From assembly GCA_044892505.1 (NCBI GenBank), contig CM097882.1, positions 106,516,001-106,580,000 of the forward strand: DNA of 64,000 nt, in the 5' to 3' direction. The position numbers were made by a program, and so were the translations under genes. Numbering within the stretch: the first letter of the stretch is position 1; every line of letters begins with the position of its first letter. The notes beneath the pieces were generated by a model. That model was not told the origin of the DNA. It made no database searches and saw only the letters and a list, made by a program, of their open reading frames with translations. The DNA is from Schmidtea nova. Lineage: Eukaryota. Shown piece after piece: positions 5,062 to 36,470 of the stretch.

Positions 5062-5670
5062 TTATTTAAACAAAACGTTCATCTTGGATATCTCTAGGTG
5101 GATCTTGGAATTGTTGATCTGGATTGATTCTTGGATCGGTATGCTGAAATATAACCAAGTCACCTCCCATAATGGTAACAGTGCGGCAATAAACCATCCT
5201 TGTTGTTTATATACTATTTTACGCATTTGTTTTCGATTTTTAGTATTTACGAGTGACAATAATGGTTTCTTGTGTTTGTTCAAAACCATTTTGTCTGATT
5301 TATCGATATTAATTTTACCTCTGACAACTTTCACTATAACATCAAGTAAATCATCAATAACATAATTGGGAAATGATTGGAAAATACTCATTCGTCTAAT
5401 ACTTGGAGCCTTTAGTAATGCATTGAAAAATGGGAAACTTCGATGATTTTTAGATTTTATTGGTTTTTCAACATTCTTAGGTTTTACCTTGTGTGAAATA
5501 AGGTTTATTGTTGGAAAATTTTCTATAATTAGTTTTTTCGATGGGGTAAAACTGGTTTTTGGTGGAATTATTGATTCACGATTCTTTTTAAAGACTTTTC
5601 TAAGTTTTGATGACTTTAAAAGTTTAGCACGGGACTTTAATAGCATGATTGATGTCAAATAAAATTTCAA
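5062..5670 (-). CDS. Polinton/adintovirus conserved small basic protein ('GasderminX'-like), probably frameshifted near the C-terminus
   Basis: LLKAPSIRRMSIFQSFPNYVIDDLLDVIVKVVRGKINIDKSDKMVLNKHKKPLLSLVNTKNRKQMRKIVYKQQGWFIAALLP matches the family pattern ending in Q(K/Q)GGF..LLP (here one G appears as W). AATAAA overlaps the stop. Confidence 0.65.
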   Translation of the reverse strand: MKFYLTSIMLLKSRAKLLKSSKLRKVFKKNRESIIPPKTSFTPSKKLIIENFPTINLISHKVKPKNVEKPIKSKNHRSFPFFNALLKAPSIRRMSIFQSFPNYVIDDLLDVIVKVVRGKINIDKSDKMVLNKHKKPLLSLVNTKNRKQMRKIVYKQQGWFIAALLPLWEVTWLYFSIPIQESIQINNSKIHLEISKMNVLFK

Positions 5671-6278
5671 CTTTGTTTATAAACCACAGCTCCTTCTTTG
5701 TTAAAAATATCCGTTCGAACTCGTAATTCATCAGGACATTGCTGAGTGAAATCAAGAAAAATATATCCATGCGGTATTTGAGTTGCATTTTGAAATGCAT
5801 TGATCAAGAAATTACGATTATTGTGGTAGGCTTGTCTAGCAAGAAAATCAATAACTGTGGCATCTCTAGGATTTTTGTAAACAACGAGATATTGAACATT
5901 CAGGTTACCTGTTCGATGAGATCCACCTTGATGAAACAGATTTTGAGTTATAAAAATAACTGTGACACATTTATGTCGAGCTATTTTCGTGAATAAATTA
6001 TTAAAATCCTTTTCTTTATTCGCTTCCTTTTTAATAATTACATCATCTTGTCTCAATCTGAATGACCAGTTTTTATCAAAACCTTTTATTATCGTCATTT
6101 TATTCTTACAAAATTGATCTTGAGTCATTCCATGCTCCCCATCAGCTCCCCTATGCCAATAAATCTTGTTGAATTTTGACTTGAACATTTTTGATTGCAA
6201 TAATTTGCAAACAAATAAAGTTTTCCCACTCCTACTCGGGCCAACAATTTGATAAACTGCATCATTTCTTAATTCCAT
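5667..6278 (-). CDS. FtsK/A32-type genome-packaging ATPase of Polinton/adintovirus type; Walker B apparently deleted
   Basis: Walker A GPSRSGKT; downstream LFTKIARH..VTVIFITQNLF, YLVVYKNPRD, HGYIFLDF.Q, LRVRTDIF are typical of Polinton ATPases. The expected hhhhDD Walker B reads VIIKKEANKE. Confidence 0.9.
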   Translation of the reverse strand: MELRNDAVYQIVGPSRSGKTLFVCKLLQSKMFKSKFNKIYWHRGADGEHGMTQDQFCKNKMTIIKGFDKNWSFRLRQDDVIIKKEANKEKDFNNLFTKIARHKCVTVIFITQNLFHQGGSHRTGNLNVQYLVVYKNPRDATVIDFLARQAYHNNRNFLINAFQNATQIPHGYIFLDFTQQCPDELRVRTDIFNKEGAVVYKQS

Positions 6279-6359: not shown

Positions 6360-6897
6360 ATGATTGGCAATATAAATTACAAAGGTAAATGTTTTGTGTC
6401 TCATCTAAAGTTTCCAGGTGGGAAACCTCAACAAATAGTTGATAGAAGCGGAAAATATCCAATTATATTTTTCAAGTCGGGTAAATGTAGAATTATAGGC
6501 TGTAAAGAACCACTCAAAGTAGAAGACTTACATTACAAGATTCATGATTTAGAAATCCAATCCATTACAGTAACGGCAAATATTGGAAAATCTATCAATT
6601 TATTGGAATTATCCAAGATCATACAATGTGTTTATGAACCTGAGATATTCCCTGCTTTGAGATATATTAAATATAATCCAATGTGTGAACATATTTGCTA
6701 GTGGTAAAATGGTTTTACTTGGACTAAAAAGACTGGATTATCATGATTTAATCAGTCAAATCATTGATGAAATAAATTCGATGATTGAGGACAAAGACTT
6801 TTTAGACTTTTTACTGTCCCTTGATGCAAATTATATACAGTATATCACCTGTGACTCATACAGACATACCACGTGCAAATCAAATGCAATAATTTGA
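6360..6897 (+). pseudogene. Intronless TATA-binding-protein (TBP)-fold gene with a single 2-nt frameshift
   Basis: Repeat 1: YPIIFFKSGKCRIIGCK (TBP: TALIFSSGKMVCTGAK). Repeat 2: IQSITVTANIGKSINLLELS..VYEPEIFPALRY + VNIFASGKMVLLGLK (TBP: IQNMVGSCDVKFPIRLE..YEPELFPGLIYR..LLIFVSGKVVLTGAK). Restoring GT in ATGTGTGAAC (6681-6690) joins ORFs 6360-6701 and 6685-6897. Confidence 0.85.
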
Positions 6898-9616: not shown

Positions 9617-10867
9617 AGTTATTTCGTTCGAAACGACCCATCCGCATTAGACATTCTGTAAAATAAAAAGGATAACCTGAATGAGCACTCCCATTTGTTT
9701 CTTTAGCAAATTATTTCAGATGATCGGTTTAAGTGATTTTAACCCCAGCTCATTAGATTAGAACAAACAAATATAGCCAGAAAGCGAAGTAAAGTTTAGT
9801 TCCATTTAAATAAAATAAAATTGAGCGACAGACTAGGAGAATATAACAGAATCTGAAATGAATTCTCAAAGGTCTATCACTCCCGTAATAGATAAATTGT
9901 CCACAAGTTATAAACTGAATAATTAGAAAATAAAGCTCCTCTACTAATGCTAATAAATAAATCAGTAAGTTAAAATGAATAGTGTGAAACTCCAAATAGG
10001 AAACCCGTTTTGCGTGCTTGAATTTAGTTCTAGTAAATAAATCATCAAACAGGAAATCCATTTTTCCCAATACGTCGAGTAAGTTAGATGAAATCTTTTA
10101 GACAAGAAATCGTATATCTGCCAAATAATAAATCACTTAGCTAAAGTCCCAAAACCGGAAAAACAAAAGTCTCTCCGGGTAATTAGTAACAGCAATTCTC
10201 CTAAAACGGAAATCCATTAGCGCTGGGAGACGGGTAATGTGAGTAGAGTCGAACTACCGGCCACATATAATAAGAGCGGCGAGAGCAAAGATGTAGATTG
10301 AGGTTACTAAGGTACATGTTTATTACGGTCAACTGGAAAATGTTTAGCCGGAAACCGATTGAGTTAGTGAATTAGCTGCAGCCCTTACCATAACTATAAT
10401 ACTATTAAAGCGAGCTTTGGGTACATTAGATTTTTCCCTCTAGAGTGAAATAAATTTGCGGATATCAATTCTAATTGTAAGTGACATTCATAGTTATTAA
10501 TTATTCGTTATAATAAATCAAATTCCTATAAAAATGAACATATTTTCATGCTCGGCCAGAATTTCAAAAAGAACTGGGCTCGAAGAGTCACCAGCCAGGA
10601 GAAAGAAGAAGCCAATTCAAGAATGCCAATCCTGATAATTATTTAATTATCTCTATACCGATAAAAGCGATCCCAGCCGATTTGGCTCAAAAGATTTTTG
10701 ATCAGCTCCATCGGGATTTCCCCAGAATTCAGCATCCACCGAGACGGCCCAGATGAGATTATCTGCCACGGGAGCGCCAACTGGCCAATCGATGTAGACG
10801 ATGGCAGAAGCATATCCGATTTACAGTGGATATTCCAATGGAGGAACTCGAGAAAATCGTCCAATAC

Positions 10868-11107
10868 ATAGTTTTGCAGTAAATATGCTATGGCATATAA
10901 TACACTGCACCATGGTGCAGTATAGCAAAACTATAGGGGTCCCCCTTACCCCATACCCCCCAGTCTAAATTCAAAGCACACCTCTCGTAACAGACTTTGT
11001 GGAATTCAAAACATATTTTATATGAAGTAATGTAACTTTACCAAGTCTAGTAAAGTAAGGTTACTTTACTATTATATAAATATTTTTAAAAATGAGTCAT
11101 CAAAACA
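10868..11107 (+). repeat. Parvovirus-like terminal repeat copy 1 with Y/T-shaped hairpin ('flip', 10868-10934)
   Basis: Outer stem ATAGTTTTGC/GCAAAACTAT enclosing arms ATATGC-TATG-GCATAT and the perfect palindrome ACTGCACCATGGTGCAGT; followed by about 170 bp ending in TATATAAATA...ATGAGTCAT. Confidence 0.8.
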
Positions 11108-11706
11108 TTACACACTCAATTATTTTTGATGAACGATTTGTTGTTGTATAATGAATTATCAACTTTTATGGAGAATTTTGTTCGCGTTAGCGATTTTTAT
11201 TTTAACGATGATCACGCTCGACAAATTGATGGAATTATTTCTAATTATCACCAAGATATTATTGAGAAAGATTAAAACTATATGCGTAGCGTTATTGGGA
11301 TTTATACGATTCTCACTTCTCAAGCAGGAAAGACCAAGTCCATTATTTTAGAGGGATGTAGTAATGCAGGTAAGTCATTATTCACAGCTATATGCCGAGG
11401 AGATTGGTCACACGGCTTTTCTACTGGAGCTCAATATAAAAGTGAATTCTGTTTCGATGATTGTATAGGTAAACAGATTATTATTGATGAAGAAATCTAT
11501 TGTGACTTCAAAAATGTAAATCTTATAAATGTGTAAATATCTTTCTGCGTGTTTCTCGGAAAAAATTGATTCTAAAGCCAATCTTCCATCTGTGCCATGC
11601 ATTATATCAAACAACCACCCAATCTGAAAGTATGCCAGTGAGCATCAACAACCTCTAAAAATCGTAGTCTATATGTGAAATGTGAACAACCATATATATT
11701 TATTAA
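11108..11706 (+). pseudogene. NS1: Parvoviral NS1 SF3 helicase fragment (N-terminal nuclease domain absent)
   Basis: Walker A ILEGCSNAGKS, Walker B FCFDDCIGKQIIIDEE, motif C PCIISNN and PLKNR arginine-finger region, across stops and frameshifts. Confidence 0.85.
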
Positions 11707-11940
11707 TTTTGCTATACTGCACCATGGTGCAGTGTATTATATGCCATGGTATATTTACTGCAAAACTATAGGAGTCCCCCTTACCCCCTACCCCCAAGTC
11801 AAAATTCAAAGCACACCACTCGTAACAGACTGTGAGATTCAAAACATATTTTATATGAAGTAAAGTAACTTTACCAAGTCTAGTAAAGTAAGGTTACTTT
11901 ACTATTATATAAATATTTTTAAAAATGAGTCATTAAAACA
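11707..11940 (+). repeat. Parvovirus-like terminal repeat copy 2 with the hairpin in the inverted-complement ('flop') form
   Basis: Direct repeat of 10871-11107 except that the hairpin interior (11707-11769) is the reverse complement of copy 1: TTTTGCTATACTGCACCATGGTGCAGTGTATTATATGCCATGGTATATTTACTGCAAAACTAT. Confidence 0.8.
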
Positions 11941-13600
11941 CAAAATTTATTTCTATTACAAGGGATTAGGTTGAGCTAATCCTGCACGCATGTGATACGA
12001 AATGTTAGAAGGTATCTTGAATCTTGCTGCATTATGTTTGATCATGGGAAATAAATCGTCATCTTTAGACAGTTCATCTCTAATCCAATAATACACAGGC
12101 ATATAATAAGGTATTGAAGGTTTCATCCATTTGGTTGTAGGTTGCCAAAGTTGATTAAATTGAGCAGTTGAATATGTTACATCATATATTTGACGATTAT
12201 TTGTAGTTGGTAATTTTCCTTACATTTCCATAGTGTAAGAAATTTTCCAATTAAAGGTACAAGTAAGGTTAATCTGATTACCTTGAGGTCCTACCATAGT
12301 ATTTAGTTAGATAAATAATTGAGACATCGGATTGTGTTCAGATACATCCTTTGCTTCATTTATTCCAAAATATTCATCAAGATATAATCTTTTAGGTTTG
12401 TAATAGTCATCTACTAAATATTTATCTGTAAGAGCAGTTTTATTATGAAGAGTAACCTCTGTCTCTCCATGTTTATACATGAATCTTTATAACTTTTCAT
12501 TCCATTTTCTTGTCCATTTGTGATAGCGAATTTTTGAATGGTATGGAACAGTTCTATTGATTGCATCTATAGTACATCTGCCTAAACCAACCATATACGA
12601 GAATGGTTTTACAACTTGACAATTAAAATAGTCCCATCTATGCCAAATAATGGATAATTGTCTTCAAAAGTTTTAAGATCGTAATGTTGGTTCCACCATC
12701 CAACAATATAACGAGGATATTTTACCTTCATAACTGTATTATATTGTTTCACCAGTATTACAATTTACTATCTCAACCTCTGGACAAGTTTCTGGATAGT
12801 ATATCCAACCTGCTTTTGGTAATTTCTGAAGAGTTAATTTAGGTAATTGATTATTTACATTATAACCATTATCTAAAGATGCTTCGTTTAAGAAAGGTCT
12901 TTAAATGCTTTGGCTTTATTTTCAGGCATAGTGCACGGGCCATAGATATGAGCTTTGTTTCTGAGAACCAACATCTCCACATGATTTTGTAATCCATTAA
13001 AATTTTGTGTAGACGTTTCACCAACAACTTGTATATTGAATATTTCAAAGTGCATATTTTTCGGTTTCCACCACAAATATTTTTGCATAGCTGCCCATAA
13101 ATCTGGGTTACCGCACATTATATGAGGGTACGCACTGGTATATTATACCACTCTCCTTGCTCGGTGGTACTGATGCAACTAGCTTCTCAATTGGTACTGG
13201 TGAATTCAAGGCTATCGTTCCCGAGAGGGGGCTAAAATCTCCTTGCTGGTGTCGTAAAACTCCATTACCCCCGCCTGATCCAGGCACCACTAACAGCGAG
13301 TGGTACAGGAGTCGTGGTAGGAACTGTTGTCGATAACATTTCATTAATACCTTGTAACAGATTATCAAATGCTTTTATACTAGTCTTTGTGTGTCTGTAT
13401 TTTTCAACCACTTGAGTATGTGTGTCAAGAAGGTGTTCTTTCATTTGTAGGTGATGGAACCTATTTTAAGTACTTTGATCCATATTTTGCTTAGAAACCT
13501 TTTTATCGTATGGTTGTATGATTTTATCAACATGTCCCTTCCAATCCTCATGGGTGATACTGTTATGATAATTATGATGGTAATAATAACGTAATACATT

Positions 13601-13637
13601 TGATCTATAGTCATTATGAGAATTATTGATAATAATA
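13601..13637 (+). mobile_element. 37-bp 5'-truncated insertion of the Penelope-like repeat, with 10-bp TSD
   Basis: TGATCTATAGTCATTATGAGAATTATTGATAATAATA matches 14185-14220 and is flanked by GTAATACATT at 13591-13600 and 13638-13647. Confidence 0.8.
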
Positions 13638-13990
13638 GTAATACATTAAGTTGTATATAACTTATACGCCTTAGTAAATAATCAGGTTTATGTTGATTAA
13701 AATAATTCACATCGGGTTCTTGGTTATGATTTAATTTTAAATAATCTCTTTTAAATCTTCTCCTGCTTGTAAACGGTTTATTGCATTTCTTTTTACCCTT
13801 TCTAATGTGTATCCAATTGGCATTTCAGTAAAAGGGTCATATTTTAAAAAAATATTTCATTTTATAATTTTCCTAATCATCAGGTATATGTTCTTTATTA
13901 AATATATTATTTTTTGATTTCTGAAAGTGATCATATATTTGAATACACATGTAGTATACGAGGGTATAATTTATCAAAATTTGATGTTAT

Positions 13991-14217
13991 CATAATTATC
14001 TTTTTTCACCTTTGATCTTTTTTTATTATTATTATCAATAATTCTCATAATGACTATAGATCAAAAGTTTTTTTTATAAACAATAACACAATATTTCGGC
14101 ACAGCCTTTATCAAGTGTGTATTTGATAAACACTTGATAAAGGCTGTGCCGAAATATTGTGTTATTGTTTATAAAAAAAAATTTTGATCTATAGTCATTA
14201 TGAGAATTATTGATAAT
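13991..14217. mobile_element. Penelope-like element terminal fragment in head-to-head inverted arrangement, with 13-bp TSD
   Basis: About 90-bp inverted arms (about 14028-14117 and 14131-14220) around a 13-bp spacer; TSD AATTTGATGTTAT at 13978-13990 and 14218-14230; each arm carries a minimal hammerhead-like motif. Confidence 0.7.
14129..14163 (+). ncRNA. Minimal type-I hammerhead ribozyme-like motif (U3-A8 core variant)
   Basis: AACAC-UUGAUAA-A-GGC(UGU)GCC-GAAA-UAU-U-GUGUU: stem I AACAC/GUGUU, stem II GGC/GCC, short palindromic stem III as in Penelope minimal hammerheads. Mirror copies on the - strand at about 14085-14120 and 24571-24606. Confidence 0.6.
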
Positions 14218-14899
14218 AATTTGATGTTATGTTTATAAATTTCTACATACTCATATTCTTTAAAGTTAGATAATGTAGATGATAACATTTTATTACTATG
14301 ATCAATATATTTTTTATTTGTAAAATATTTACTTGATTCCATTAACTGTTGATACAAGTCTTCATTTTCATATATAAATTTGTTATAACCATTGTCTAAT
14401 TCTAATAACTCAAACATATCTGGGTTTTTTGTACCATTTTCTTTTAATAATCTTTCAAATAATCGCATTCCATTATATACAGATATCTTAGATATTCTTG
14501 ATTCTAGTAATTCAAATAATTCTTTATTATCGGATAATCTATTAGGTTGATGCTTTTTTTTCTAAATTATAGTCTTTGTATATGCGAAATTAATTTAAAT
14601 CTATCTTATGTTGAAAGTAATCAGTAATTTCTACATAACCATCCATTCTAGTTAAATTATTATAATAATAACGTGATCCAAATGTTGATCCAAATCCATC
14701 GTCGACAATTATGTGTTATATTGTGAATTCATTTGATGATGATTAGAATCTAAAATAATTTAGTGTTTTAGTTGGTTCTTAACTTCATATTGTGTTATCA
14801 TCATTAATTTAGGTGTAATTGTAGAATATAGTTTTTTATATTAAAGTGATTTTTATCAAGGAAATCGAGACAGTGTAGTAGAGACAAGTATATTCAAGG

Positions 14900-17050: not shown

Positions 17051-18239
17051 ACCCCAGCAGATGGATTTAACATAAGATTGAGATTTTTATAATTTTAAAA
17101 TGGTGTCTTGCGAAAACTAAAATTAAAAATTATTTTGTTTAACTAATGCGAAAACCTCTAAATAAAAATACGGGCATGTAATTCACTTAAGCTCTGACAC
17201 AAACGCCTAATAAAGTCCCAACAAATAGCAAACAATAGATACATAGATAAATTATAAAATTATAAAACAAATGTTGAAAATGTTGGAAGTATTTCACTAT
17301 ATTTACATATAACATAACATGAAAAAGGTAAACCAAAAAAATACTTAAAGAGCAATAGCAAAAAAATATAATGAGCATTGGCAAATAAATATAATAAAAA
17401 TTAATTGTAATAATTAAAAAATTGAATAAATTAAAAATTAAAATTAATAATAATTGAATAAATTAAAAAAAATAAAATTAGATAAGTAATAGAATTATGA
17501 GTAAAATATTATGTAAATAAGAAAAAGAAAAATATTTAAAATATTAAATTAAGCAAATATCACGAGATAATGAATATAAATCGAGCAAGTGAAGGTCGCA
17601 AAAATGAAATCCGTCGAAATAGTCGAAATTTGGATATGAGATATGGTATTATTATGGAAGAATTAAAATTACTACATGTAACAAGTTCAACTCATGATTA
17701 TGTTGTAGTGTTCAGTTGCTAATTCTATGGTTTCTTATCCTTTACTCAGTATCTCTCCAACACACACTCCGTGAACATTGTAAAGCTCTCGCTAGTACAC
17801 CCACAATCATTCTCTGACAATTGCGTTGGTGATGTGTACAGCGGCGGCGAGTTTTAATAGTGTTGGATGATGAGGGAAGACCCGTCATCACATTTACCCT
17901 CAATAAGTACTACAGAATAATTACTACAATAAGTCATCCACCACTCCTAATTTAATTCAATTTATCTTTCTCATCAACCCAATAATCTCAATTCCCAACT
18001 CCAACAAACCAAAAGTTTATCCATCGGCCAATTATTGAGTATTTATCGACTTGATAATTTATATTTTATTTTGTATGTATTATTTTTTTTATTGTACAGT
18101 GCATTTTATTTTATGTAATTTTATATTTTATTAATTAAATTTTATATTGTTAATTAATTTTAATTGCCATAAATTTTAGTAATTAAAATTATTTTAATGT
18201 AAATAGTGGTTTGGGAGATTTAATGTAAATATAAAATAG

Positions 18240-19115
18240 TGTTCGGTTATTAGTGTGAAGTCGGTAGTTTCTGACTCCCGTGTTCTCTTTCAATTACAAA
18301 ATAAACCAAACCCAACACAATAATTTTCTTTATTTTTTTCAAATGATCACAACTCTTTTTATCACAAAAAGTTACTCAGGCTCTGCACTCTTCGCGTGAG
18401 GGTAGAACACCCAATGGGATATCTCCCTCTCTGGTACGTAAAATATTAAGTTCAAGTTCTACTTTTGATTTCCTTTCAACGTCTCCTCCAAATATCTTCT
18501 AACAGTTTGAGATTCACTTTACGCCTAAAATTTATCTTCGACCAACTGGCAATTTCGGCACTTTGCTCTCCGTTTTTATACCATCTTTGTGTTGCCATTC
18601 TGTCGGTGTAATTGGATATTATCGAATCCGTCGCTTGTAATCGGATCTGATTAGCCCTGCTTGGTCGTAACTGGACCTTTGCCGTTTATGGTTTTTCCGG
18701 CTCTCCCCGGGGCATTCAATTAAATTTGATAGTTTAATGACCTCGCTGATGCCTCGGGTTTCCCACATTATTCGGATCTCCTACTAGCTCGGGTTTCCCA
18801 TTATCTCGGGTCTCCCATTAGCTCGGGTTTCCCACTAGCTCGGGCTTCCTATAGAATAATTAATTATTTTAATTAATTTGTATTTTCTAATTATTTCCTT
18901 CTGGGGGCCCCTTTTTATTTTTATATACCCATATTCGAATTCGTCTCGTCGTTTGGCATCCTCCCATACCAGTTTCCCCCACTCAATTTTTATTTTAATT
19001 TTTTATAAATTTTTTAATTAATGTTTGAACATTAATTATTATTTTTCCAATTTTTGTATTTTTATTGATTTATGCAATTTTAAATTTATTTTCTGTGATT
19101 TTCACAAACCCAACA
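18240..19115 (-). repeat. 3' LTR
   Basis: Direct repeat of 23085-23960; contains about five copies of an 18-bp CTAGCTCGGGTTTCCCAY unit (about 18750-18855), a TATAAAAA and an AATAAA on the - strand. Confidence 0.92.
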
Positions 19116-20199
19116 TATCTCCCCTTTTTTAAAAGATTCGTCCTCGAATCTACATATAAACATATTTTTTATCATAAATCCTGACATTGATCCTATAATA
19201 GTAATAGTGATGATAATATCACCAATAATTGTAATAATAAGGATAACAATAGTAATAATTACAATAATACTGGTAGTAATGACAATGACATAAGTATAAT
19301 AATGATGATGGTAATAGTATTGGTAGTACCACTATACTGATAATAATGATAGTAATAATATTTATAATAGTGATAACACTAGTATTAATAATATTAGCAA
19401 TAGTNNNNNNNNNNNNNNNNNNNNNNNNNNNNNNNNNNNNNNNNNNNNNNNNNNNNNNNNNNNNNNNNNNNNNNNNNNNNNNNNNNNNNNNNNNNNNNNN
19501 NNNNNNNNNNNNNNNNNNNNNNNNNNNNNNNNNNNNNNNNNNNNNNNNNNNNNNNNNNNNNNNNNNNNNNNNNNNNNNNNNNNNNNNNNNNNNNNNNNNN
19601 NNNNNNNNNNNNNNNNNNNNNNNNNNNNNNNNNNNNNNNNNNNNNNNNNNNNNNNNNNNNNNNNNNNNNNNNNNNNNNNNNNNNNNNNNNNNNNNNNNNN
19701 NNNNNNNNNNNNNNNNNNNNNNNNNNNNNNNNNNNNNNNNNNNNNNNNNNNNNNNNNNNNNNNNNNNNNNNNNNNNNNNNNNNNNNNNNNNNNNNNNNNN
19801 NNNNNNNNNNNNNNNNNNNNNNNNNCAAATTTTAATCATCATATCAACAAGTAATGAAATATTTTTTTTGTCATTGCGCTCAAAATTGGAATCAATTTGT
19901 TTTCTTGATAATTGATACATCGTTTTAATTATACCATTCAACTTTCTTGCGCAATCTTCTGATTTCGAGGCTAAGTAAAATGAAGTCATTGCAACATAGA
20001 CTGGCTTTAACTCATTAATTTAACTCAATTAATTTCCTTTCGAAACCTGACCCCGAGAAAAGATGAGAGAAGGCGCCGCAAATTAAAGCGGCGTCGCTCC
20101 TTATTTTTCTCATTTGTCATGCATTTTAATTTTTATTTTCTGTGAGTAAAAAAAATTTTGAATTTATATATTTATTTATTTAATAATTTATATATTTAT

Positions 20200-21122
20200 T
20201 TAATTAATGTGTTTATCGTCATCCAATTCTTCACCTTTATATCTCAGCACTATAATTCCATCTTTACCTAACATTTCCGCAGCTCTTTTACACACTTTTC
20301 GAACTTTCGTACACCAGTGTTCCTCTACATACTCAGTTTTCCTAATATCTTCATATTCTATTGCAATTGTTAACGAATTTAACTCGACTCTATCTTTTCT
20401 AAGCTCTTTACCCAATTTCTCATTATTCTCTTTAAACATTGTCTATATCCCGTTCTTCTAAACAAATAGGGTCGTATAACATTAGCAAGTTCTAATTTTT
20501 CCTTTTGCCCAAATTCAGAATCCTCAATTAACTTTACTATCTCAATAATTTCATTTTCGTCACCAATATATAAAACATCAGATAACTCCCTAACTATTTC
20601 CATCGGATCATTTTTTATCATTTCACTGTTACTCATCATGCTGGCTATTTGTAATTCATTTTTATTCCCTGGTATGAAACCACAGTCGATTACATATTCC
20701 TCATTTTCTAAATCTCTATTTTTAAACTTTAACTCGACTACCCAGCCTTCACATTTCTCTCTTAGTCTCCTTTTTAAATCTTTTACACGATCATAGGCTT
20801 CACAACGACAAGTAATCACATTTTTATCATTTTCATTAACAACATCAATAAAAATAAAATCTAACCATTTATTTTCTCGAAACGATTTTCCAAATTTTCT
20901 CATCAATTCTTTAATTTCATCTCTATTTGTTACATTTATTTGATAATAATTAGCACACAAATTAATCACGCCTTTCAATTTTCTCATACTTAACGACATT
21001 TGACTCAGGTTTTTAATCGATCCCAATATTTTAGATGATTCTACCACGCTAGCTTCTAGTAATTTCTCAAGTCTTTTCATCATCATGATAGCCTTTTCGC
21101 TTTCCAAATCGTTTTTGTACAC
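20200..21122 (-). CDS. ORF(s) downstream of gag encoding two ubiquitin/SUMO-like domains
   Basis: IFIDVVNENDKNVITCRCEAYDRVKDLKRRLREKCEGWVVELKFKNRDLENEEYVIDCGF aligns with ubiquitin [55 protein letters not shown]; second unit TKVRKVCKRAAEMLGKDGIIVLRYKGEELDDDK in the overlapping frame 20200-20439. Confidence 0.6.
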
Positions 21123-22575
21123 CCAGTTGTCGTGTCAGCTTCTGGCATGTCTTGCTGCGATCCATACATCATGTGATTATCCAATTCATCATCAGATTCA
21201 AACTTGGACATTAGGCGCTCCAAACGTCGACTCATTTCTTTCACTTGGTTTTCAATCTTTTCATTGAAATCATCTGATTGAACAAAAGCCACGTTGTCTG
21301 TCTGCAGTTTATCATTTTGGAATCTTATTGATTGTTTTAATATAGGTTTCTGAAATTTGTCGACATTCCTCGGGCATGATCTAGCCATGTGTCCATACCC
21401 TCTACATGAATAACATTGAATTTGACCTTGAAGGTTCACTCTATCTCTTTGTGGGGATGGTGAAGTTGATGGAGACCTCGATCTAGCAAAACAATTTCGA
21501 GAGACATGTCCTTTCCTTCCACAATTGTAACATTGCACATTATCATTATTACGCTGATCCTTAAAATTTAGTTTATTAAAACTTTCTCACCATTACCCTT
21601 CAACCAATCTGGCCACATTCGTTTTCGGCTTCGTTGAACATTATTTTTAGATCAGCATTGATTGCTGTTATGTCCCATCCTTTGACAATAATCACACTGA
21701 ATTGGAGTTGGACTTTTCGGAGATCTATTTTTGAACCAACATTGATTAACATGGTGTCCTATTCGTTGACAATGGCTGCATTGAATTGGCTTCTCTTTTT
21801 CATCAATTTGAACATTTGTTGATTTATTTGGCTCAAATCTTTGCCTAAACGTTGGTGATGGACTAATTGATTGCTGAAGCCGATTGTTTCTGACTGGAGT
21901 TATGGACCGTTCTCTGGGTTCATTAATGATGGCAAATGATTCTGATTTTGGATGTGAACTTTTCAGATTTAACTCAATTTTCATCGCCTTTTTGATTAAC
22001 TCATCAAAGTTATTGAAGTCCACATAACATAATGCCTTTTTGATCTCCTTTTTGACTCCCGTTAAGAACTGGTCTTGTAGCAATTCTTTCACCTGCATTG
22101 CCACTTCAATCTGTTCCGGCTTTACTTCGAATGCTTTCTCTGCAAGAGTAGTCAAGTGGTACGCAAATTCACTTACCGATTCCTCTGATTTCTGCACTCG
22201 ATTATAGAACTTCTGCCGCATTATCCGTTTTATATCCCCTCCAATGAGTTTCGCGGCAGAGGCATCTTTCAGTTTCATCCAGTCATTAGCAATAGTTCTT
22301 TTGTCAATTTGTTGCCACGCTTCTCTCGCTGCTCCCTTTAGACATAGTGGCAATCTTTGCACCATTGTCGGTTGGCTCCATCCATAGGCTGTAGCGCACA
22401 TGTAGTAATCCGCCATAAAATCAACGAATTCCACCGGATCGCCTCCATATTGATTTACTGGCAGTTTCTGGCAGCTAGCATAGTCATTGCCATTGCCGTT
22501 ACTGGTGGACATGGGCGTGTCATCATGATTGTTTGTATTACTCATTTTTATTTCTGGTTGTTTATTACTTCTCAA
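21083..22575 (-). pseudogene. gag: Gag with four CCHC zinc knuckles (one nonsense change, one frameshift)
   Basis: Capsid-like YGGDPVEFVDF..W...L.L.LKGAAREAW..FYNRVQKSEESVSEFAYHL..LAEKAF; knuckles CSHCQRIGHHVNQC, CDYCQRMGHNSNQC, CYNCGRKGHVSRNC, CYSCRGYGHMARSC. Confidence 0.92.
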
Positions 22576-23084
22576 TTCGTAATATGGTCGGTTTGGTACA
22601 ACTTTTTCTCTTCTAAATTTTAATATATCTATTATAAAATTTACCTTTATTTAATTTTCAACAGTATAAATCTTTCCACAATTATCAACAAACTTTTATC
22701 AATCCTTGATTCAATTTACCGACTGCTCACGTCGGAATTTTTACTCAATTTTACAATTTCAACGACTCAGAAGTTTACTGCAACTTTCAATTTCTTTTGC
22801 CAATAAATATTTAATCTCTTTTTGGAAATGCTTCACTGACTTTTGATAAATCAATAGTTTTCTTTTAATTATCTCCTTTCTTTTTTTGCAATGCTTCACC
22901 GACTTTGATCATGTCGGAATTTATCAAAAATTTTGTTTTAATTCTTTATTATTATTATTTTTTTTTCAACAACGTTTCACCGACTTTGATCACATCGGAA
23001 TTTATCAATAATTTTCTTTTAATTCTTTATTATTTTTTTTCAGCAACGTTTCACCGACTCTGATCACGTCGTGCTCACCAAATA

Positions 23085-23960
23085 TGTTGGGTTATTAGTG
23101 TGAAGTCGGTAGTTTCTGACTCCCGTGTTCTCTTTCAATTACAAAATAAACCAAACCCAACACAATAACTTTCTTTATTTTTTTCAAATGATCACAACTC
23201 TTTTTATCACAAAAAGTTACTCAGGCTCTGCACTCTTCGCGTGAGGGTAGAACACCCAATGGGATATCTCCCTCTCTGGTACGTAAAAGATTAAGTTCAA
23301 GTTCTACCTTTGATTTCCTTTCAACGTCTCCTCCAAATATCTTCCAAAGGTTTGATATTCACTTTACGCCTAAAATTTATCTTCGACCAACTGGCAATTT
23401 CGGCACTTTGCTCTCCGTTTTTATACCATCTTTGTGTTGCCATTCTGTCGGTGTAATTGGATATTATCGAATCCGTCGCTTGTAATCGGATCTGATTAGT
23501 CCTGCTTGGTCGTAACTGGACCTTTGCCGTTTATGGTTTTTCCGGCTCTCCCCGGGGCATTCAATTAAATTTGATAGTTTAATGACCTCGCTGATGCCTC
23601 GGGTTTCCCACATTATTCGGATCTCCTACTAGCTCGGGTTTCCCATTATCTCGGGTCTCCCATTAGCTCGGGTTTCCCACTAGCTCGGGCTTCCTATAGA
23701 ATAATTAATTATTTTAATTAATTTGTATTTTCTAATTATTTCCTTCTGGGGGCCCCTTTTTATTTTTATATACCTATATTCGAATTCGTCTCGTCGTTTG
23801 GCATCCTCCCATACCAGTTTCCCCCACTCAAACTTTATTTTAATTTTTTATAAATTTTTTAATTAATGTTTGAACATTAATTATTATTTTTCCAATTTTT
23901 GTATTTTTATTGATTTATGCAATTTTAAATTTATTTTCTGTGATTTTCACAACCCCAACA
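23085..23960 (-). repeat. 5' LTR
   Basis: See element entry; the PBS lies 4 nt inside the LTR end. Confidence 0.92.

Positions 23961-24397: not shown

Positions 24398-24472
<75 letters not shown>
24392..24472. repeat. (TA)n microsatellite
   Basis: About 80 bp of TA repeats with a short CATA interruption. Confidence 0.95.
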
Positions 24473-24476
<4 letters not shown>

Positions 24477-24606
24477 CATAATTATCTTTTTTCACCTTTG
24501 ATCTTTTTTTATTATTATTATCAATAATTCTCATAATGACTATAGATCAAAATTTTTTTTTATAAACAATAACACAATATTTCGGCACAGCCTTTATCAA
24601 GTGTGT
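24473..24606 (-). mobile_element. Further Penelope-like terminal fragment with hammerhead-like motif, embedded in (TA)n
   Basis: Nearly identical to 13987-14120. Confidence 0.75.
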
Positions 24607-27544
24607 ATATATATCTATATATATCTATATCTATATATACTCGTTAGACTTGTTTATTTATATATAAGAATCACCCCCATAGGTTGGAGTTTCCAATATA
24701 AGTATTAAAGACGTCAACAGTAGGCAGGTGGGCTATGTCAATATGATTGCTTCCTACTAATCTCCTTTAAACGGATTAATCTTTGTCGATAGAAGACTTA
24801 TTTTTTCTCTTAAGGCCAATCCTGGTCACAAATCTATCTCAACCTCAACACGTGATACAACTATTATATACAAAGACAAAAGAAAACACAAGTATATATG
24901 TACTAATTATACATAAATTCAACTAAATATTCTATTTACTTTATGTCACGGGTCCAATTCGCTTAATCCATATAAATACTCCAACTGACGCGTTAATTTG
25001 GCTGTTGTTTTCTGACCCTTCGTTCCTTTTAGCGCTCATAAGATATCGTTTAGGGGACACCGTTGATGGTTTCCCGACAAGTAGGTATATTGTTTATGTG
25101 TTGAGTAACAACTTCCGGGTACTAAATTTCAACGGCAGAATCTTGCTTGCAGACTCCTGTTCCACGAATTACTTCGTCATCAAATCCTTACAGTTTTATA
25201 ATTTGAGGCGTTCAATTTTAACTGTAACTCCTCGTTAACGCGTTTGGCTTAAATGAATCTCTGTTGGACCTTCCTCATGGCCAAAACTTGAGTGTCCTCA
25301 AACTCCTGAATTCTCCGTTTTATTCGTTCTTCAAAATGCCTATTCTATATCTCTTGCTGATAGGAAAATTTATTTAAGGCGACATATCATTACTGTAATA
25401 ACAAAATAATATACGAGCTTAAAATATGTGATATTATCATACAAATCCCACCTTACTCTTAATATCTACATCAAACTCCACTATTTCTGGTTATCTACGC
25501 AAGATGATCTCACCACAATTCCACTCGAATAAATTCTACTATCAAACTACTATCAAACATATTAAACAGTCATGCACAAGGAAAACTAATATATAAAACC
25601 AGACAACTATAATTTTCACCAAATACAAAACTTAACAGATTACATAGATATTTGTCTTTCATAGTGAGACTAAGTCTCTCTGACTCCGCCTCCGGGACGT
25701 AACGAGCATGCCCATGGCGTGGAACTCCATCTGTGGAATGTTTTTTGTATACGAAATTCCTCGGCATCCTGGTATGTCGTCTGTTATGTGATATTGATTG
25801 ATTATGTATGTTATAATTATTTTGTTTTGTTATTATAGTGTGTGCTGATGTGGAGGATTAAAGAGCCCAACAGTCTCCGGTAAAAAACTGTGTCGGGACG
25901 GTTGGGGTGCGTGTTGTGTAATTGGAATGTATTTGTGCGTGTCTATTTGTTACAATATAATTTAACTAAAAATAAATAACAAATAACTCAGAATTAATTC
26001 AACAAGATTTATTTAATTAACAAATTCGATATTGTACTCACGCAATAATTCTTTGTATCATACAACAAATTCATAAACATCTAATTCTTCAAATTCATAA
26101 AATTCGTTATTTTTTGTTATTTTCCTAAGCATTATTTTGTAATTTTTTCAAATTTGTAGTTTCTTTTATTTCTATAGAAATTTTATTTGATTCTAATACA
26201 TTATTGATTTTTATTTTGAATTTTAATTTGATATTTTTAATTTTTAATTTATTTTCCTTGAAATCATTTCTTCAGGCATATTTGCTAACAAAAAAATTAT
26301 AATAAAAGGGGGGTTATCATGTATCCGCAAGGACGCCCACAATAGTAGCGGTAGCCACAATAACAACAATAACATTAATAATAATAATGATAATAATAAA
26401 AATAATAAAAATACAGCATTAACATAGTCATTAATAATAAGGAAGTAAAAGGGACAGTCGGTAGCGTCATTGTCGACCCAAATCAACTAGTGCTGGCTTC
26501 GTCGCTAGACTATCTGGTTTTCTCTCTGTTCGTCCGACAGGAGTCTTTGTCCCTTCCCTATTTCCTGCTCATATTGTCGGAGCATCCGCTCAGTCTGATC
26601 TTCTATCAGAAACTGAAAAGGCCTAGAGATAGCATAACTAATCGCGAATAGAACCCTTAATCTCATGCATCAGGTCTTTCCTAGATATTATTCGCTCGAA
26701 ATTTTCCTATGGTGGCTACATTTTCATTTTTACCTACGAAAACTATTTTATTCAGTTTATATCAAATGAAGTACATCTACGCGATCGAGACTATCTAGAT
26801 TATTGCAAGTGATGTTGCTATTACTGATGAAATCATGAGTTTTCTCTTTTATTATCCTTATCCCAAATCGGGAACACAAATATTATATTTTAATTCGCGG
26901 TTCTTTTAGTTTTATTGGAAATTCGATATGTCGGTTGTATCTTCTGGGCGTGTTATCCGAAATACGATACCTAGTGTGAAATCAATCAGGGTCAATCATG
27001 TTTCTCTATGTTTTACGCCATTTGTCAGCTTAATGTGATGCTAATCGTAAATCGTTTACCTTTGTGATACTGTAGTAATCCTGTATGTGATATGACAAAG
27101 ACTCGAATCATTAGATATGACCGTGGCAGATTTATTCATTCAATATTAACAATTTTTCAATATCAATTTTGAGCTCAAAATTTGAATTTATTTGGAATTT
27201 CAAGGACTTACACTTTCCCCATAAATTACTTTCACTATTTTGTCTCACAACGCAATTTTTAAATGATGGTGACTACGACACATCGGGAACTTGTGAATGA
27301 GTAGCCTACAAAGTCCGTTTATACTAATTTTAATCAATCATGAGGGCACAAGTGAATTATTAATAATAAAATTTTAATAAAAGAAATAAAATAAAAATAA
27401 ATTACCAATTGCTTTCAGTTCACTAGCGATTTCAACAGAATAATTGCTAAGTTTCACTAAGTTTCACTGATCGTTTAATAAGTAGGCGGTTAAAACCAGT
27501 TCAGTTTTGTGTTAACAGTTAATAGTAATAGTTGTTAGACTGAC

Positions 27545-27592: not shown

Positions 27593-27996
27593 AAAATCGT
27601 TCCATCTGGTAAAATAGTAAGTTTTAATATTTCATTTAACCAATCATATTATTATAGTTTTCCTAAATATATTCTCTTTCCTTTTCTAAATGTTTTCTAA
27701 CCTAGTTTATTATTTTTAATTAAATATTATTTTAATTATCATAATTATCTTTTTGTTATTAATTCTCTATTATTCTAAGAGGCTTTCCTTTTTTGTTTCT
27801 TTTTAATTGGTTGTTTTTCTCTAGCTAGTTTATTATTATGTTATTATTCTTTACTTGTTTCCTGATTCATTTATAATTTTTTTATTTTTTTCTATTAATT
27901 ATTTTTCTTATCTCATTTCCTTTGCACTTTTACTAATTGAATTTTTCAATTTGTTGCTTCAATCAGCTTAAGAAGAAATTTCAACAAACGAAGATA

Positions 27997-30390
27997 TAGG
28001 TGGATTGTTGACCGTCAATATGACCTTGACTTTGTTATGGATCATCATCAAAAACTCATCACATAAAACATTATTTAACCATCATGTTACCCACTACAAT
28101 GTAACGTGGTTAATGCAACAAATATGTGATATCCGCAAACAGTGAGCGTCGAAAAATTCGAAACTATGATTGTACGAATGTCACAATGAGATCAAGGGCA
28201 ATCGAAGGAAGGTCCTCTGCCATTTCGTCAGACGATAACTTCTTTATTTTCTAAATTGTAGTATAATTCGAAGCAAAGTTCGGATTCGGATATCGAACTT
28301 TTTGGAGTTACCCAATAAGTCGAGCTTCTTGACGCCGCTTCCGACGAAAGTGGACTTGTTTGCTGGGTCACCATTTCTTTGGGCGATCGATTGCTGGATT
28401 TCTATGTAGAATAATTCCTATCCGAGTCGGGAATAATTCCAAGGCAGAAAGCCCGGTTTTCGGCAGCTGTATTGCCAACACAATGCCTGTGTCTATCTTC
28501 ATTTGGGCAATCTCGGCATCGCGGTTTCGAATGGTCAGTTTCAGCGCCTATATCTGGAACGTATCTTCGGCTGTCTGCTCGTGCAGTAACTTTATCTGTT
28601 TGCACATCTTCTCGATACCGTCCACGTTCATCCACATAGATTCAATCTTTTAGCACCGAGAGCGGAATTTCTTCATGCGTTTCGTTATGGTCCGGAACTC
28701 ATCACAGAGGAGTTTCTTCTCCTCTTCCATCTCGACAAAGCAAATCGATAATCGCCTATATTCATTTCTGTCATTTTTGCCATCAAGTCCATTTTGGCTT
28801 CCATTTTATGTTTTAGGGATAAAGTATAAATGATAATTTTATCAAGCACATTTCCATGTAAGCATCCGCATTTATCTCTCCTTAAACAATCAATATCTTA
28901 ATGAAATAGCTCCTGAATTCCGGCTCTAAACGGCGCTTATTCCCATCTCCAAAAGGATTTATTTTCAGTGGGCGTTGAAAATTAGGATAAAATCTGTTTG
29001 AACTTAATTAGCCTTAATCTAAGACCATGACTATGTATTATAATTCTAAATTGTACTCAAATCAAATTAAACATAATAAAAAAAATTTAAGTTTGCGCCG
29101 AGGCCTTAGTAACAGCAACTGCGAATTACTTAGGAATTTTATTAGTTTTGAACCTTGGATTTCCTTTTTACCCTTATTTAAGTTTGTAAAATTATTGAAT
29201 AATTTAAATTATATTACGGTGTTGAATCAGGACTACCCTCCTTCGTTTTTTCTAGAGAAAAATCGTGTTAAATTATTAAATCTATATAACTAATTTTAGA
29301 TGGTTATCGAAAAATTAAGAGAATCTGCTTGATCAGATTATAGTATGTTAAGCTTTGTTGCATAATCATTTTATAGATTATAACTTATGTTAATTTTAAG
29401 AAAACGGATCTCTGATATCGAAACTGATGGCCAAAGAAGTAGCTTGAAAATTTTTAAAATAACACTGTTTACCATTAATATGTTTAGAATTTGGATTTAT
29501 TTCCTAAAAGAAACGTCTTCGGGTTCGGATTGAACAATTCGATATATTTAACAATTTCTCATGCATCTGTCACTAATGAACAAAGTTCTAAATCTCAGTG
29601 GATTTCACTCAATCTCGACCCTATCGGTGGAATTTATCAAGACAATCGCTCTCGGATTTTTCATACTCTCTCTGTGCTCTAATGGAAATCGATTTACGTC
29701 TCAGTTTATAAATATTACAATCGTAAATCAAGGCAATTTATAAACTGATATTATTATGATTTATAAGTACCGGTGCAATTCATGATTAATAAGGTTAATA
29801 ATTTTATGTGGGTCGTTGTAGAGGATGTCCTTAGATTTTCTATGTAATACAACCAGTTCTGTGGAATTTTATCAATTGACTAACTAATTTTTTTGAGTAT
29901 AATCACCAAATGCATATAATCTTAATGACTTAAAAATTCGGTCTTTCTACCTAATATAGCTGAAATTTAACGGGTGTTATGAACTGCAAAATGATTACTA
30001 CTATAGGATGTTATAAACGACAGGTAGAATAATTAATGTTATAGGATTTGATTGAATGAAATCTTAGATTTTTTTAAGCAGATTGGTTGATTTTATGGGT
30101 GCTTATGAATAAATGAATTCATTTTGGATGAATAAGATGTTATTGGATCAAACGTGTTTATGTGTAATATGCTAGATTTTATGGATGTTGGTGAATGGAT
30201 GAGACTTTTTTTGGATGCATGGAGTGTTATTGATTGAAACTTTAGATTTTTTAAATAATATAACTAAGGATTCAATGATTATTTTCTGTGTGATGATGGG
30301 ATGTAAGAGGTGTTATTCGGTGAAATATTTGTTGAGGTTCCGAGAATCTCAACCTAAGGTTCTTATATAAATAAATAAGTCAACACTGGT
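27997..30390 (-). mobile_element. C-type unit: D remnant, CCGAGGCCTT motif, family-C ORF, conserved 3' block
   Basis: C ORF about 28804-28300 (RMKKFRSRC*KIESMWMNVDGIEKMCKQIKLLHEQTAED...IDTGIVLAI...RRKRRQEARLIG); block 28220-27997 homologous to 45912-45693. Confidence 0.7.
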
Positions 30391-31457
30391 TCGTATTAAA
30401 TCTTTATTACAATAACAAAATAATAATTACCAAGCTAAATCAAAATCAAACAACTTCTTTCAACTCAAAATTTGTCTGTGTGAATGTGTTATGATTGTAA
30501 TATGTAATGCGTGAATGCTGCTCTGAGCTCGATTTACTGTATGCTCTAATTTAATTTTATAGTCGATAACAACTACAAGATTTTTATTTGCAGTGATTTT
30601 TGGGTGATTTGACTGAAAAATCAGTTTGCTAATATACCAAATTTCAGTTGGCATCACATTTCGAGTGTCAACATACTTTGTTTGTCAAAAGTCAATAAAA
30701 TTTCTGTTTTAAAAGTGCAAACTTTAATGGTTACTATTTTTGGAATCATCTCTTTATCCAGCTCTTTATCCTCTTTAATGTTAAAAAGGCATCAATTTAT
30801 ATCGGTTTGGCCTTTATATATCGTTAATTATACTATTTTCTATAGTTACTTCTTTATTTATCTTTTATTGCTTTTGTCAATTTTGTTGTGGTTTTGGATG
30901 GGTTAAAACAAAAAGATAAATACGCTCTAGGGATACCTTCATCCAAACCTAAACATAAAATGCTAACGTGACACACAAGCACCCTCGACTATTTCCTTGG
31001 AATAATCGAGTTGGAAATGTGCAAGGTGTTTGAACAATGATGGGCAGGTGAGCTCTATTGCTAAAACTACTCCCCATTTATGTTCACGGGTTCGTCGCTG
31101 CCGATAGAAGGACTTACGCTTTACTTTCACTTTAATTTATCTGAACTCATTAGCTTTCATTTTATTTTTTCTTTCTGCCCCCTTCTTTACAATATCAACA
31201 GGTAATTCGAACTAACTATATATCGATTTTACTTTAATATTCCTAATGTTTATCATTTATCGAATTTTGTTAGCGCTTTTGCCAATTTGTAACTTGTATT
31301 TACTTAAGTTTTTTATCTTTAATTTGAAATCTTTTAATGAATACTTTATTTTAAATACTTTACTATAAAATAAATACAAAACAAAACAAAACAAAAATGT
31401 AATAAAACCAAATGTTTTGCACACCACAATGATATAATTAAATAATGCTCGGCCATT

Positions 31458-36033: not shown

Positions 36034-36330
36034 GAGGAATTATTAACAGAAATATTTCCCCCAGTCGGAGTTTTCACCGAACTAATTAAAGATTAAATAA
36101 ATTCTCGTATTCTCGTCAAATTTTTGTTGTTTACTTAAATTGGTTTAGTTAACTTAACGAATAATTAGATACCTGTAATATAAAAATATAAATTCATCAC
36201 ACAAAATACCTAAGAAAGGTAAATAAATAATTAAGTGAGCATTATGTTAAAAACCCTTCATGCAGAATAAGAGATGTTAAAGACAAATTTTCTGAAAGTT
36301 TATTGTGGAGTACATAAGCAGATGATTAAA

Positions 36331-36470
36331 GCGTAAGTCCTTCTAACGGCAGCAATGAACCCGTAAACATAAATGGGGAGTAGTACTAGCGATAGTGCTC
36401 ACCTGCCCATCATTGTTTAACCACCCTGCGCATCACCAACTTGATTATATAGGGAAATAGTCAAGGGCGC
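36331..36470 (+). ncRNA. Conserved structured cis-RNA element 3' of ORF B
   Basis: Homologs at 15843-15975 (+), 31119-30978 (-), 42779-42645 (-), partial about 56640-56690 (+); compensatory base changes in stems (see findings). Confidence 0.6.

What the first reader, a model, noticed from the sequence alone, without database searches (positions are those of the whole stretch)
10868..11940. Both flip and flop isomers of a parvoviral terminal hairpin are fossilised in one locus
Seen: two roughly 240-bp direct repeats (10868-11107, 11707-11940) agree along their length except that the roughly 65-nt Y/T-hairpin interior of one is the reverse complement of the other (two mismatches). Established: flip/flop heterogeneity is produced by rolling-hairpin replication of parvoviruses, and termini are rarely retained in endogenous parvoviral elements. 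Inference: two termini of a replicating genome were captured; a simple host duplication would not invert only the hairpin.
Basis: partly seen in the sequence, partly recalled or inferred. Interest (0 to 1): 0.75.

Follow-up and report, generated by a model that had tools for sequence, protein, structure and literature searches.

The report
Fossil parvovirus-like hairpins, flip and flop

Summary
Two 240-nt units (10868-11107 and 11703-11940) are 94% identical in direct orientation. Their outer 67 nt match only as reverse complements (63/67; interior 45/47, against 10/47 direct). Each 67-mer folds into a T-shape with a 10-bp stem and two small arms.

The units are terminal repeats of a parvovirus-like element:
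- Copy A carries a TATA box and an initiator-like site. 22 nt further on, a small stand-alone SF3 helicase gene begins. Its only relatives are six short proteins, one of them the helicase of the planarian virus-like element PEVE.
- Copy B's inner edge lies 18 nt from the 3' end of a badly broken capsid gene on the minus strand. One piece of that gene hits only parvovirus capsids in the PDB.

Because the units are direct rather than inverted, the locus is not one intact genome. The best reading is two fragments joined head-on: a left end with a truncated helicase gene, and a right end with the capsid gene. Each kept a whole terminus, one flip and one flop.

Integrated flatworm densovirus loci with retained terminal repeats are already published. 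Flip and flop together in one such locus I did not find reported. Not excluded: a native internal repeat, a later host inversion, or misassembly. The host was not identified.

The parts
10868..11107 (+). Terminal repeat, copy A (240 nt): hairpin plus a 173-nt inner part with a 24-nt near-palindrome, a TATA box (11073-11082) and an initiator-like site (11097-11102)
   Evidence: the similarity to copy B ends at 11107
10868..10934 (+). T-shaped terminal hairpin, first orientation: 10-bp outer stem (10868-10877 with 10925-10934) and two small arms
   Evidence: -19 kcal/mol, z -5.5
11129..11702 (+). Stand-alone SF3 helicase gene, broken. It has at least three breaks, including in-frame stops and at least one frameshift. 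It is cut short at its 3' end by roughly 35-50 codons where hairpin B begins.
   Evidence: Pfam Parvo_NS1 E 0.04; representative search; tblastn of six relatives E 3e-18 to 3e-12; alignment A2; break count
11703..11940 (+). Terminal repeat, copy B (238 nt), same orientation as copy A apart from the hairpin
11703..11769 (+). T-shaped terminal hairpin, opposite orientation: arms swapped and complemented relative to copy A
   Evidence: -10.4 kcal/mol, z -2.3; interior 45/47 as reverse complement
11959..13860 (-). Capsid gene remnant; outer bounds, with the upstream bound uncertain. At least 8 to 11 breaks (stops and frameshifts, plus host-repeat insertion); no open stretch longer than 88 codons.
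   Evidence: the piece 12891-13142(-) hits only parvovirus capsid chains in the PDB, 30 of 30, best E 0.012, aligned to VP2 residues 110-146 of about 535; break count
13861..14715 (-). Unassigned stretch upstream of the capsid remnant. It may or may not belong to the element, and it holds an inserted host palindromic repeat.
   Evidence: no Pfam, PDB or protein relatives; repeat found

Best explanation
The locus is a decayed endogenous copy of a small linear, single-stranded, parvovirus-like element with identical terminal repeats and genes on one strand: terminal repeat, helicase, (other genes), capsid, terminal repeat. Two fragments were joined facing each other, most likely by end-joining when they entered the chromosome. 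The first is a left end (copy A plus the helicase gene without its last part). The second is a right end (copy B plus the capsid gene, read on the minus strand). They came from two genome molecules or from one broken molecule. Each fragment brought a complete terminus. During hairpin-primed (rolling-hairpin) replication the terminal palindrome is nicked at its inner edge, unfolded and copied, which inverts it each round. Any terminus is therefore flip or flop with equal chance, and here one of each was frozen. Shown: the repeats, the inversion, the folds, the helicase and capsid homologies and their orientation. Inferred: the replication mode, the joining event, and the nick site at the palindrome's inner edge (10934/10935 and 11769/11770). 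The element is now dead, with both genes broken.
For: The inversion covers exactly the palindrome interior, 45/47 as reverse complement against 10/47 direct. Both copies fold into a T-shape. Both copies stop at the base of the 10-bp stem although their outer neighbours differ (unrelated sequence beside A, helicase gene beside B). This fits true molecular ends. Copy A: TATA and initiator-like sites lie in the repeat, and the helicase ATG follows 22 nt after it. Six relatives, all starting with M, align from their N-termini there. Tapeworm densovirus loci show the same TATA-to-ATG spacing of about 55 nt (PMC6880638). The relatives carry the Parvo_NS1 and PPV_E1_C domains. Their profile hits papillomavirus E1, parvovirus NS1 and AAV Rep in the PDB at 1e-11 to 5e-8. 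One relative is the PEVE helicase, which was placed with parvoviruses by PMC3198968. Copy B: the capsid piece hits only parvovirus capsids. Its position in VP2 predicts a gene end close to 11959, 18 nt from the repeat, as in a one-strand genome. The helicase falls short of all full-length relatives where hairpin B begins, so that junction is secondary. There is no third copy and no copy away from viral genes in the window.
Against: Capsid support rests on one 84-aa piece with weak E-values (0.012 at best). Other pieces, Pfam and the word search gave nothing. No HUH nuclease, which would do the nicking, was found in the helicase gene, its relatives or the rest of the locus. The left end and helicase gene of the second fragment are missing, and the right limit of the element is unknown. 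Only two copies exist, so there is no covariation test of the fold. The host genome could not be searched, so the copy number of the unit outside this window is unknown. The 6% difference between the copies could be age or two different parent genomes.
Confidence: 0.7

Rival explanations
1. Native architecture: in this lineage the helicase gene is flanked by two copies of the repeat as part of the normal genome (a short unique region and a long one, each bounded by repeats), or the helicase sits on a small genome segment of its own. On this reading the locus is one genome, or two co-integrated segments, rather than a chance join.
For: PMC3198968 speaks of a 'PEVE small segment' that carries the helicase. 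The contig that holds the PEVE helicase is only 1911 nt. From my memory of the PEVE abstract, which I could not check here, that genome has a short and a long unique region flanked by inverted repeats. The two hairpins do form a 66-nt inverted repeat around the helicase gene.
Against: The helicase reading frame stops roughly 35-50 codons short of all three or four full-length relatives, exactly where hairpin B starts, and the relatives' C-terminal parts find no match in copy B. The outer 173 nt of the units are direct, not inverted. Copy B's promoter points into the 3' end of the capsid gene.
Confidence: 0.12
2. Assembly artefact: palindromes and near-identical repeats were mis-joined, or one hairpin was written in the wrong orientation by the assembler.
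For: Hairpin palindromes and 240-nt repeats are hard to assemble, and the window has three N runs.
Against: The copies differ at 6% of positions and by a 2-nt indel, so they are not collapsed or duplicated reads. There is no gap within 2 kb. The unpaired bases between the arms are inverted consistently with the arms.
Confidence: 0.07
3. Host duplication of one terminal repeat, followed by inversion of the hairpin interior in the chromosome through recombination or template switching between the 10-bp stem halves.
For: Short inverted repeats can invert what lies between them (established knowledge). The result would look identical.
Against: The duplicated unit would have to begin and end exactly at the limits of the terminal repeat and land next to the capsid gene's end. 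A 10-bp stem is a poor substrate. The virus itself makes both forms at every round of replication.
Confidence: 0.06
4. The 240-nt unit is a host repeat (MITE, or the direct repeats of a miniature terminal-repeat retroelement) that only happens to lie beside viral remnants.
For: The layout of direct repeats of about 240 nt around about 600 nt has the size of a miniature terminal-repeat retroelement.
Against: The inner part is a helicase gene that starts 22 nt after copy A. There is no target-site duplication at 10867/11941, no tRNA or Rfam match, and no other copy in 64 kb that is otherwise full of repeats.
Confidence: 0.02

Closest known systems
Terminal repeats of parvoviruses with identical ends (dependoparvovirus-type T-shaped hairpin with flip and flop forms; densovirus repeats that carry promoters)
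   Same: A terminal palindrome with two small arms on a stem. Two forms that are reverse complements of each other. The repeat extends inboard of the hairpin and holds a TATA box, as in densoviruses (established knowledge).
   Different: The hairpin is only 67 nt with a 10-bp stem. The adjacent replication gene is a small helicase without a nuclease domain. The two copies lie in direct orientation in the locus.
Planarian virus-like elements: PEVE (Girardia tigrina, extrachromosomal) and PIVE (Schmidtea mediterranea, integrated; Repbase)
   Same: The only named relative of the helicase is the 227-aa PEVE helicase (representative search E 6.5e-4; tblastn E 2.7e-12; name). That helicase is also small and stand-alone. 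PIVE shows that the lineage integrates (PMC3198968).
   Different: Identity is only 30-36%. The host here is not identified. I could not compare terminal structures or genome layout, because the paper is not held and the records were not fetched.
Endogenous densovirus loci of tapeworms (EmuDNV, PMC6880638)
   Same: Integrated loci with terminal repeats kept. The repeat lies a few tens of nt beyond the capsid gene. The TATA box is 53-54 nt before the NS1 start (56 nt here). The helicase scores for both PPV_E1_C and Parvo_NS1. Copies occur as joined multimers.
   Different: Their repeats are plain long stem-loops (stems of 95-165 nt, loop of 37 nt), NS1 is 431 aa, and joins are head-to-tail. The paper does not contain the words 'flip' or 'hairpin'.
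Parvovirus-like repeat of the acorn worm Saccoglossus kowalevskii (PMC3198968)
   Same: A parvovirus-like element in a host genome with a palindromic hairpin at its 5' end. It grouped with PIVE and PEVE.
   Different: It has over 50 copies and a large NS1-type ORF. No flip/flop pair is described.

Membership tests
Parvoviridae-type genome with identical terminal repeats | Terminal palindrome that folds into a T/Y or similar hairpin | tested here: met
   both copies fold with a 10-bp stem and two arms; copy A z -5.5, copy B z -2.3
Parvoviridae-type genome with identical terminal repeats | Flip and flop forms, meaning the hairpin occurs as two reverse-complement versions | tested here: met
   interior 45/47 as reverse complement against 10/47 direct
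Parvoviridae-type genome with identical terminal repeats | The same repeat at both ends of one genome, in inverted orientation | tested here: inconclusive
   the two copies are direct in the locus; one abuts a gene start and the other a gene end, which fits left and right ends on two fragments; no intact genome is present
Parvoviridae | NS1/Rep with an SF3 helicase domain | tested here: met
   Walker A, B and motif C pieces are colinear with relatives that pass the Parvo_NS1 and PPV_E1_C thresholds
Parvoviridae | HUH nuclease domain fused N-terminally to the helicase | tested here: not met
   the gene starts 22 nt after the repeat; the relatives are 122-244 aa, start with M, and have only 50-70 residues before Walker A with no domain hit
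Parvoviridae | Jelly-roll capsid protein of the parvovirus type | tested here: met
   30 of 30 PDB hits are parvovirus capsids, best E 0.012, on the conserved core motif; support is weak and comes from one piece only
Parvoviridae | Phospholipase A2 motif in the capsid N-terminal extension (present in most but not all genera) | tested here: inconclusive
   no Pfam hit; a lone E 0.43 match to a secretory PLA2 is not evidence; the region is heavily broken
PEVE/PIVE planarian virus-like elements | Helicase most similar to the PEVE/PIVE helicase | tested here: met
   PEVE is the only named relative among 1.84 billion representatives; 30-36% identity
PEVE/PIVE planarian virus-like elements | Planarian host, and the genome layout and termini of that family | not testable with these tools
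Host MITE or miniature terminal-repeat retroelement | Many dispersed copies, a target-site duplication, and no link to viral genes | tested here: not met
   two copies only in 64 kb, both beside viral genes; no duplication at the flanks; a genome-wide count was not possible

The most novel reading that the evidence does not exclude
The locus records a parvovirus-like lineage (PEVE/PIVE-like) in which a T-shaped, flip/flop terminus is served by a stand-alone helicase of about 230 aa with no fused nuclease. Hairpin resolution would then depend on a separate, still unseen nickase. Alternatively, the genome is split, with the helicase on its own small segment, and the two hairpins are then the ends of two different segments that share one terminal repeat.
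Probability: 0.25. Interest if true: 0.7.

Novelty: new member of a known kind. Interest (0 to 1): 0.55.

Why it matters
Endogenous parvovirus-like elements usually keep only gene fragments. Here both forms of a complete terminal hairpin survive next to the genes they served. Three things can therefore be read from host DNA alone: the exact ends of an otherwise unknown virus-like lineage, its repeat-borne promoter, and indirect proof that it replicated by hairpin inversion. The locus also places a T-shaped terminus beside a helicase that lacks the nuclease domain. This sharpens the question of how the PEVE/PIVE-like lineage relates to true parvoviruses. The mechanism itself is textbook, and integrated flatworm densovirus loci with terminal repeats are already published, so this is a good specimen rather than a new principle.

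Tried and rejected
- Pfam on 36 open pieces around the feature gave only a sub-threshold Parvo_NS1 hit.
- PDB sequence searches with the helicase piece and four further capsid-region pieces gave nothing useful.
- The word-index protein search was blank for the capsid piece and for the 113-aa piece upstream of the capsid gene.
- The third protein search, with the neighbouring packaging ATPase, was meant to name the host. It returned only unnamed metagenome proteins.
- An exact look-up of ten window ORFs found none in the collection.
- A third or degenerate copy of the repeat was sought with 7-nt seeds and relaxed scoring and not found.
- The missing C-terminal part of the helicase was sought on both strands with six relatives, to test the 'one broken genome' version. 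It was not found, but that part is poorly conserved.
- Rfam and tRNA scans found nothing on the repeat unit.
- The PEVE paper could not be read.
- An ambisense genome was considered and rejected: it would place the repeats at gene starts only, whereas copy B abuts the capsid gene's end.
- A circularised-episome origin was rejected because the helicase and capsid genes converge.

Full report
**1. The observation**

Units 10868-11107 (A) and 11703-11940 (B) are real.
- Their inner 183 nt align directly at 94% identity (E 4e-75).
- Their outer 66-67 nt align only as reverse complements at 95% (E 5e-23).
- Counted base by base, the 67-nt hairpins match 63/67 as reverse complement and 28/67 directly. 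The 47-nt interior matches 45/47 against 10/47.
- Each folds as single-stranded DNA into a T-shape, with a 10-bp outer stem and two small arms. A gives -19 kcal/mol (z -5.5). B, weakened by point changes, gives -10.4 kcal/mol (z -2.3).
- The arms are swapped and complemented between the copies, and so are the unpaired bases between them. That is what flip and flop mean.
- No further copy exists in the window, even at low stringency.

**2. What flanks the units**

*Copy A and the helicase gene.*
- Copy A contains a near-palindrome, a TATA box (11073-11082) and an initiator-like site (11097-11102).
- An ATG at 11129 opens a gene whose pieces carry Walker A, Walker B and motif C of an SF3 helicase.
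- Pfam alone gave only Parvo_NS1 at E 0.04.
- Scoring the 86-aa piece against 1.84 billion representatives gave eight hits. Two are bacterial noise.
- The other six are short proteins of 122-244 aa at 36-51% identity. All but the shortest (122 aa) match Parvo_NS1, and most also match PPV_E1_C.
- One of the six is the 227-aa helicase of the planarian virus-like element PEVE.
- All six start with M and align from their first residues with the window just after copy A (tblastn E 3e-18 to 3e-12; alignment A2).
- A profile of the six hits papillomavirus E1 (1e-11), a parvovirus NS1 (9e-10) and AAV Rep40/68 (5e-8) in the PDB.
- This lineage therefore has a small stand-alone helicase as the first gene behind the repeat. 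There is no room for the HUH nuclease domain of a canonical NS1.
- The gene is broken by at least three breaks, including stops and at least one frameshift. It also ends at hairpin B roughly 35-50 codons short of its full-length relatives.

*Copy B and the capsid gene.*
- On the minus strand beyond copy B lies a chain of short open pieces in all three frames.
- One piece (12891-13142) hits only parvovirus capsid proteins in the PDB: 30 of 30 hits, best E 0.012.
- The match is to the conserved core motif at VP2 residues 110-146 of about 535.
- That position predicts a gene end near 11959, which is where the last open piece stops, 18 nt from the inner edge of copy B.
- The other pieces, Pfam and the word search gave nothing, so the capsid assignment is real but thin.
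- Reading 11959-13400 needs at least 8 breaks, and reading on to 13860 needs at least 11.
- Host palindromic-repeat sequence has also been inserted into this arm.
- The stretch 13861-14715 could not be assigned.

**3. Interpretation**

The repeat limits coincide with functional limits:
- the outer edge falls at the stem base in both copies, although the outer neighbours differ;
- the inner edge of A lies 22 nt before a start codon;
- the inner edge of B lies 18 nt after a gene end.

This is the layout of a one-strand genome with identical terminal repeats. Copy A is a left end and copy B is a right end seen from the other strand. Because the units are direct and the two genes converge, the locus is not one intact genome. 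It is two fragments joined head-on, and the join cuts the helicase gene.

Whether the fragments came from two molecules or from one broken molecule cannot be told. A search for the missing helicase tail at the far end found nothing, but that part is poorly conserved.

Hairpin transfer inverts the palindrome at each round of replication (established knowledge of parvovirus replication). One flip end and one flop end among two captured ends is therefore an even-odds outcome.

The inner edge of the palindrome (10934/10935 and 11769/11770) marks where the nick must have been. This is inference, and no consensus is known for this lineage. No nuclease that could do the nicking was found.

**4. Rivals**
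- *A native internal repeat* (a PEVE-like short unique region bounded by repeats, or a separate small segment) is the most serious rival. The truncated helicase gene and the direct orientation of the outer 173 nt count against it.
- *Misassembly* is made unlikely by the 6% divergence between the copies.
- *Host duplication plus inversion* is made unlikely by the exact repeat limits.
- *A host repeat* is made unlikely by the gene content and by the absence of other copies.
- None of the first three can be fully excluded without reads, other loci or the records of relatives.

**5. What is known**
- Tapeworm genomes hold densovirus loci with retained terminal repeats. They share a TATA box 53-54 nt before the NS1 start, a repeat 37 nt beyond the capsid gene, and the double PPV_E1_C/Parvo_NS1 signature (PMC6880638).
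- An acorn-worm parvovirus-like repeat keeps a 5' hairpin, and PIVE is an integrated relative of PEVE in a planarian (PMC3198968).
- I found no paper in the library that reports flip and flop forms in an endogenous element.
- The locus fails one defining feature of Parvoviridae, the fused nuclease, so I file it as parvovirus-like and PEVE/PIVE-like, not as a parvovirus.

**6. Host and limits**
- The host was not identified.
- The window is AT-rich and full of mobile elements.
- Nothing suggests human sequence.
- N runs were left as they are.

**8. Slips, stated as required**
- In my thinking I also wrote the inferred unmutated form of one 16-nt hairpin arm.
- My scripts printed frame-by-frame pieces of the element with coordinates, which shows where frames close. 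None of this was carried into the notes or this report.

**9. Verdict**

I rate it a new member of a known kind, with interest 0.55.

Noticed in passing
window 5670-6278 (-), with neighbour ORF 5065-5676 (-): An intact 203-aa ORF for a packaging ATPase of the poxvirus-A32 / Polinton-Maverick type. It has 267 relatives at 55-81% identity, nearly all from unnamed metagenome contigs. It is unrelated to the parvovirus-like helicase.
   Followed up: partly
window 6360-6698 (+): A 113-aa ORF with a TATA-binding-protein domain (Pfam TBP, E 1.8e-9, above threshold). It lies about 80 nt from the ATPase ORF and diverges from it. It could be a host exon or part of the neighbouring element.
   Followed up: no
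window 18234-23960: An LTR retroelement. The 882-nt direct repeats 18234-19115 and 23080-23960 are 98.4% identical and enclose gag and zinc-knuckle ORFs on the minus strand and an N run. It is much younger than the parvovirus-like repeats if those were identical at entry.
   Followed up: partly
window 24470-24608, with further copies inside the long arm of the element: A host palindromic repeat of about 190 nt (MITE-like). It gives sub-threshold miRNA-precursor matches on both strands in Rfam (mir-31, 44.8 bits against a gathering score of 51), which is most likely just its long hairpin.
   Followed up: partly
window 27995-28221, 45695-45928, 50043-50280; also 30927-31127, 36325-36521, 42658-42787: Two further families of dispersed repeats of about 130-235 nt, at 76-95% identity. 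The window is repeat-rich throughout.
   Followed up: no
window 11048-11071 and 11881-11904: A 24-nt near-perfect palindrome just upstream of the TATA box in both repeat copies. It is a candidate protein-binding site of the repeat-borne promoter or origin.
   Followed up: no
window 10400-10867: The left flank of copy A is richer in G+C than its surroundings and has open pieces on both strands with no Pfam match. It is unclear whether it is host sequence, another mobile element or a further viral fragment.
   Followed up: no
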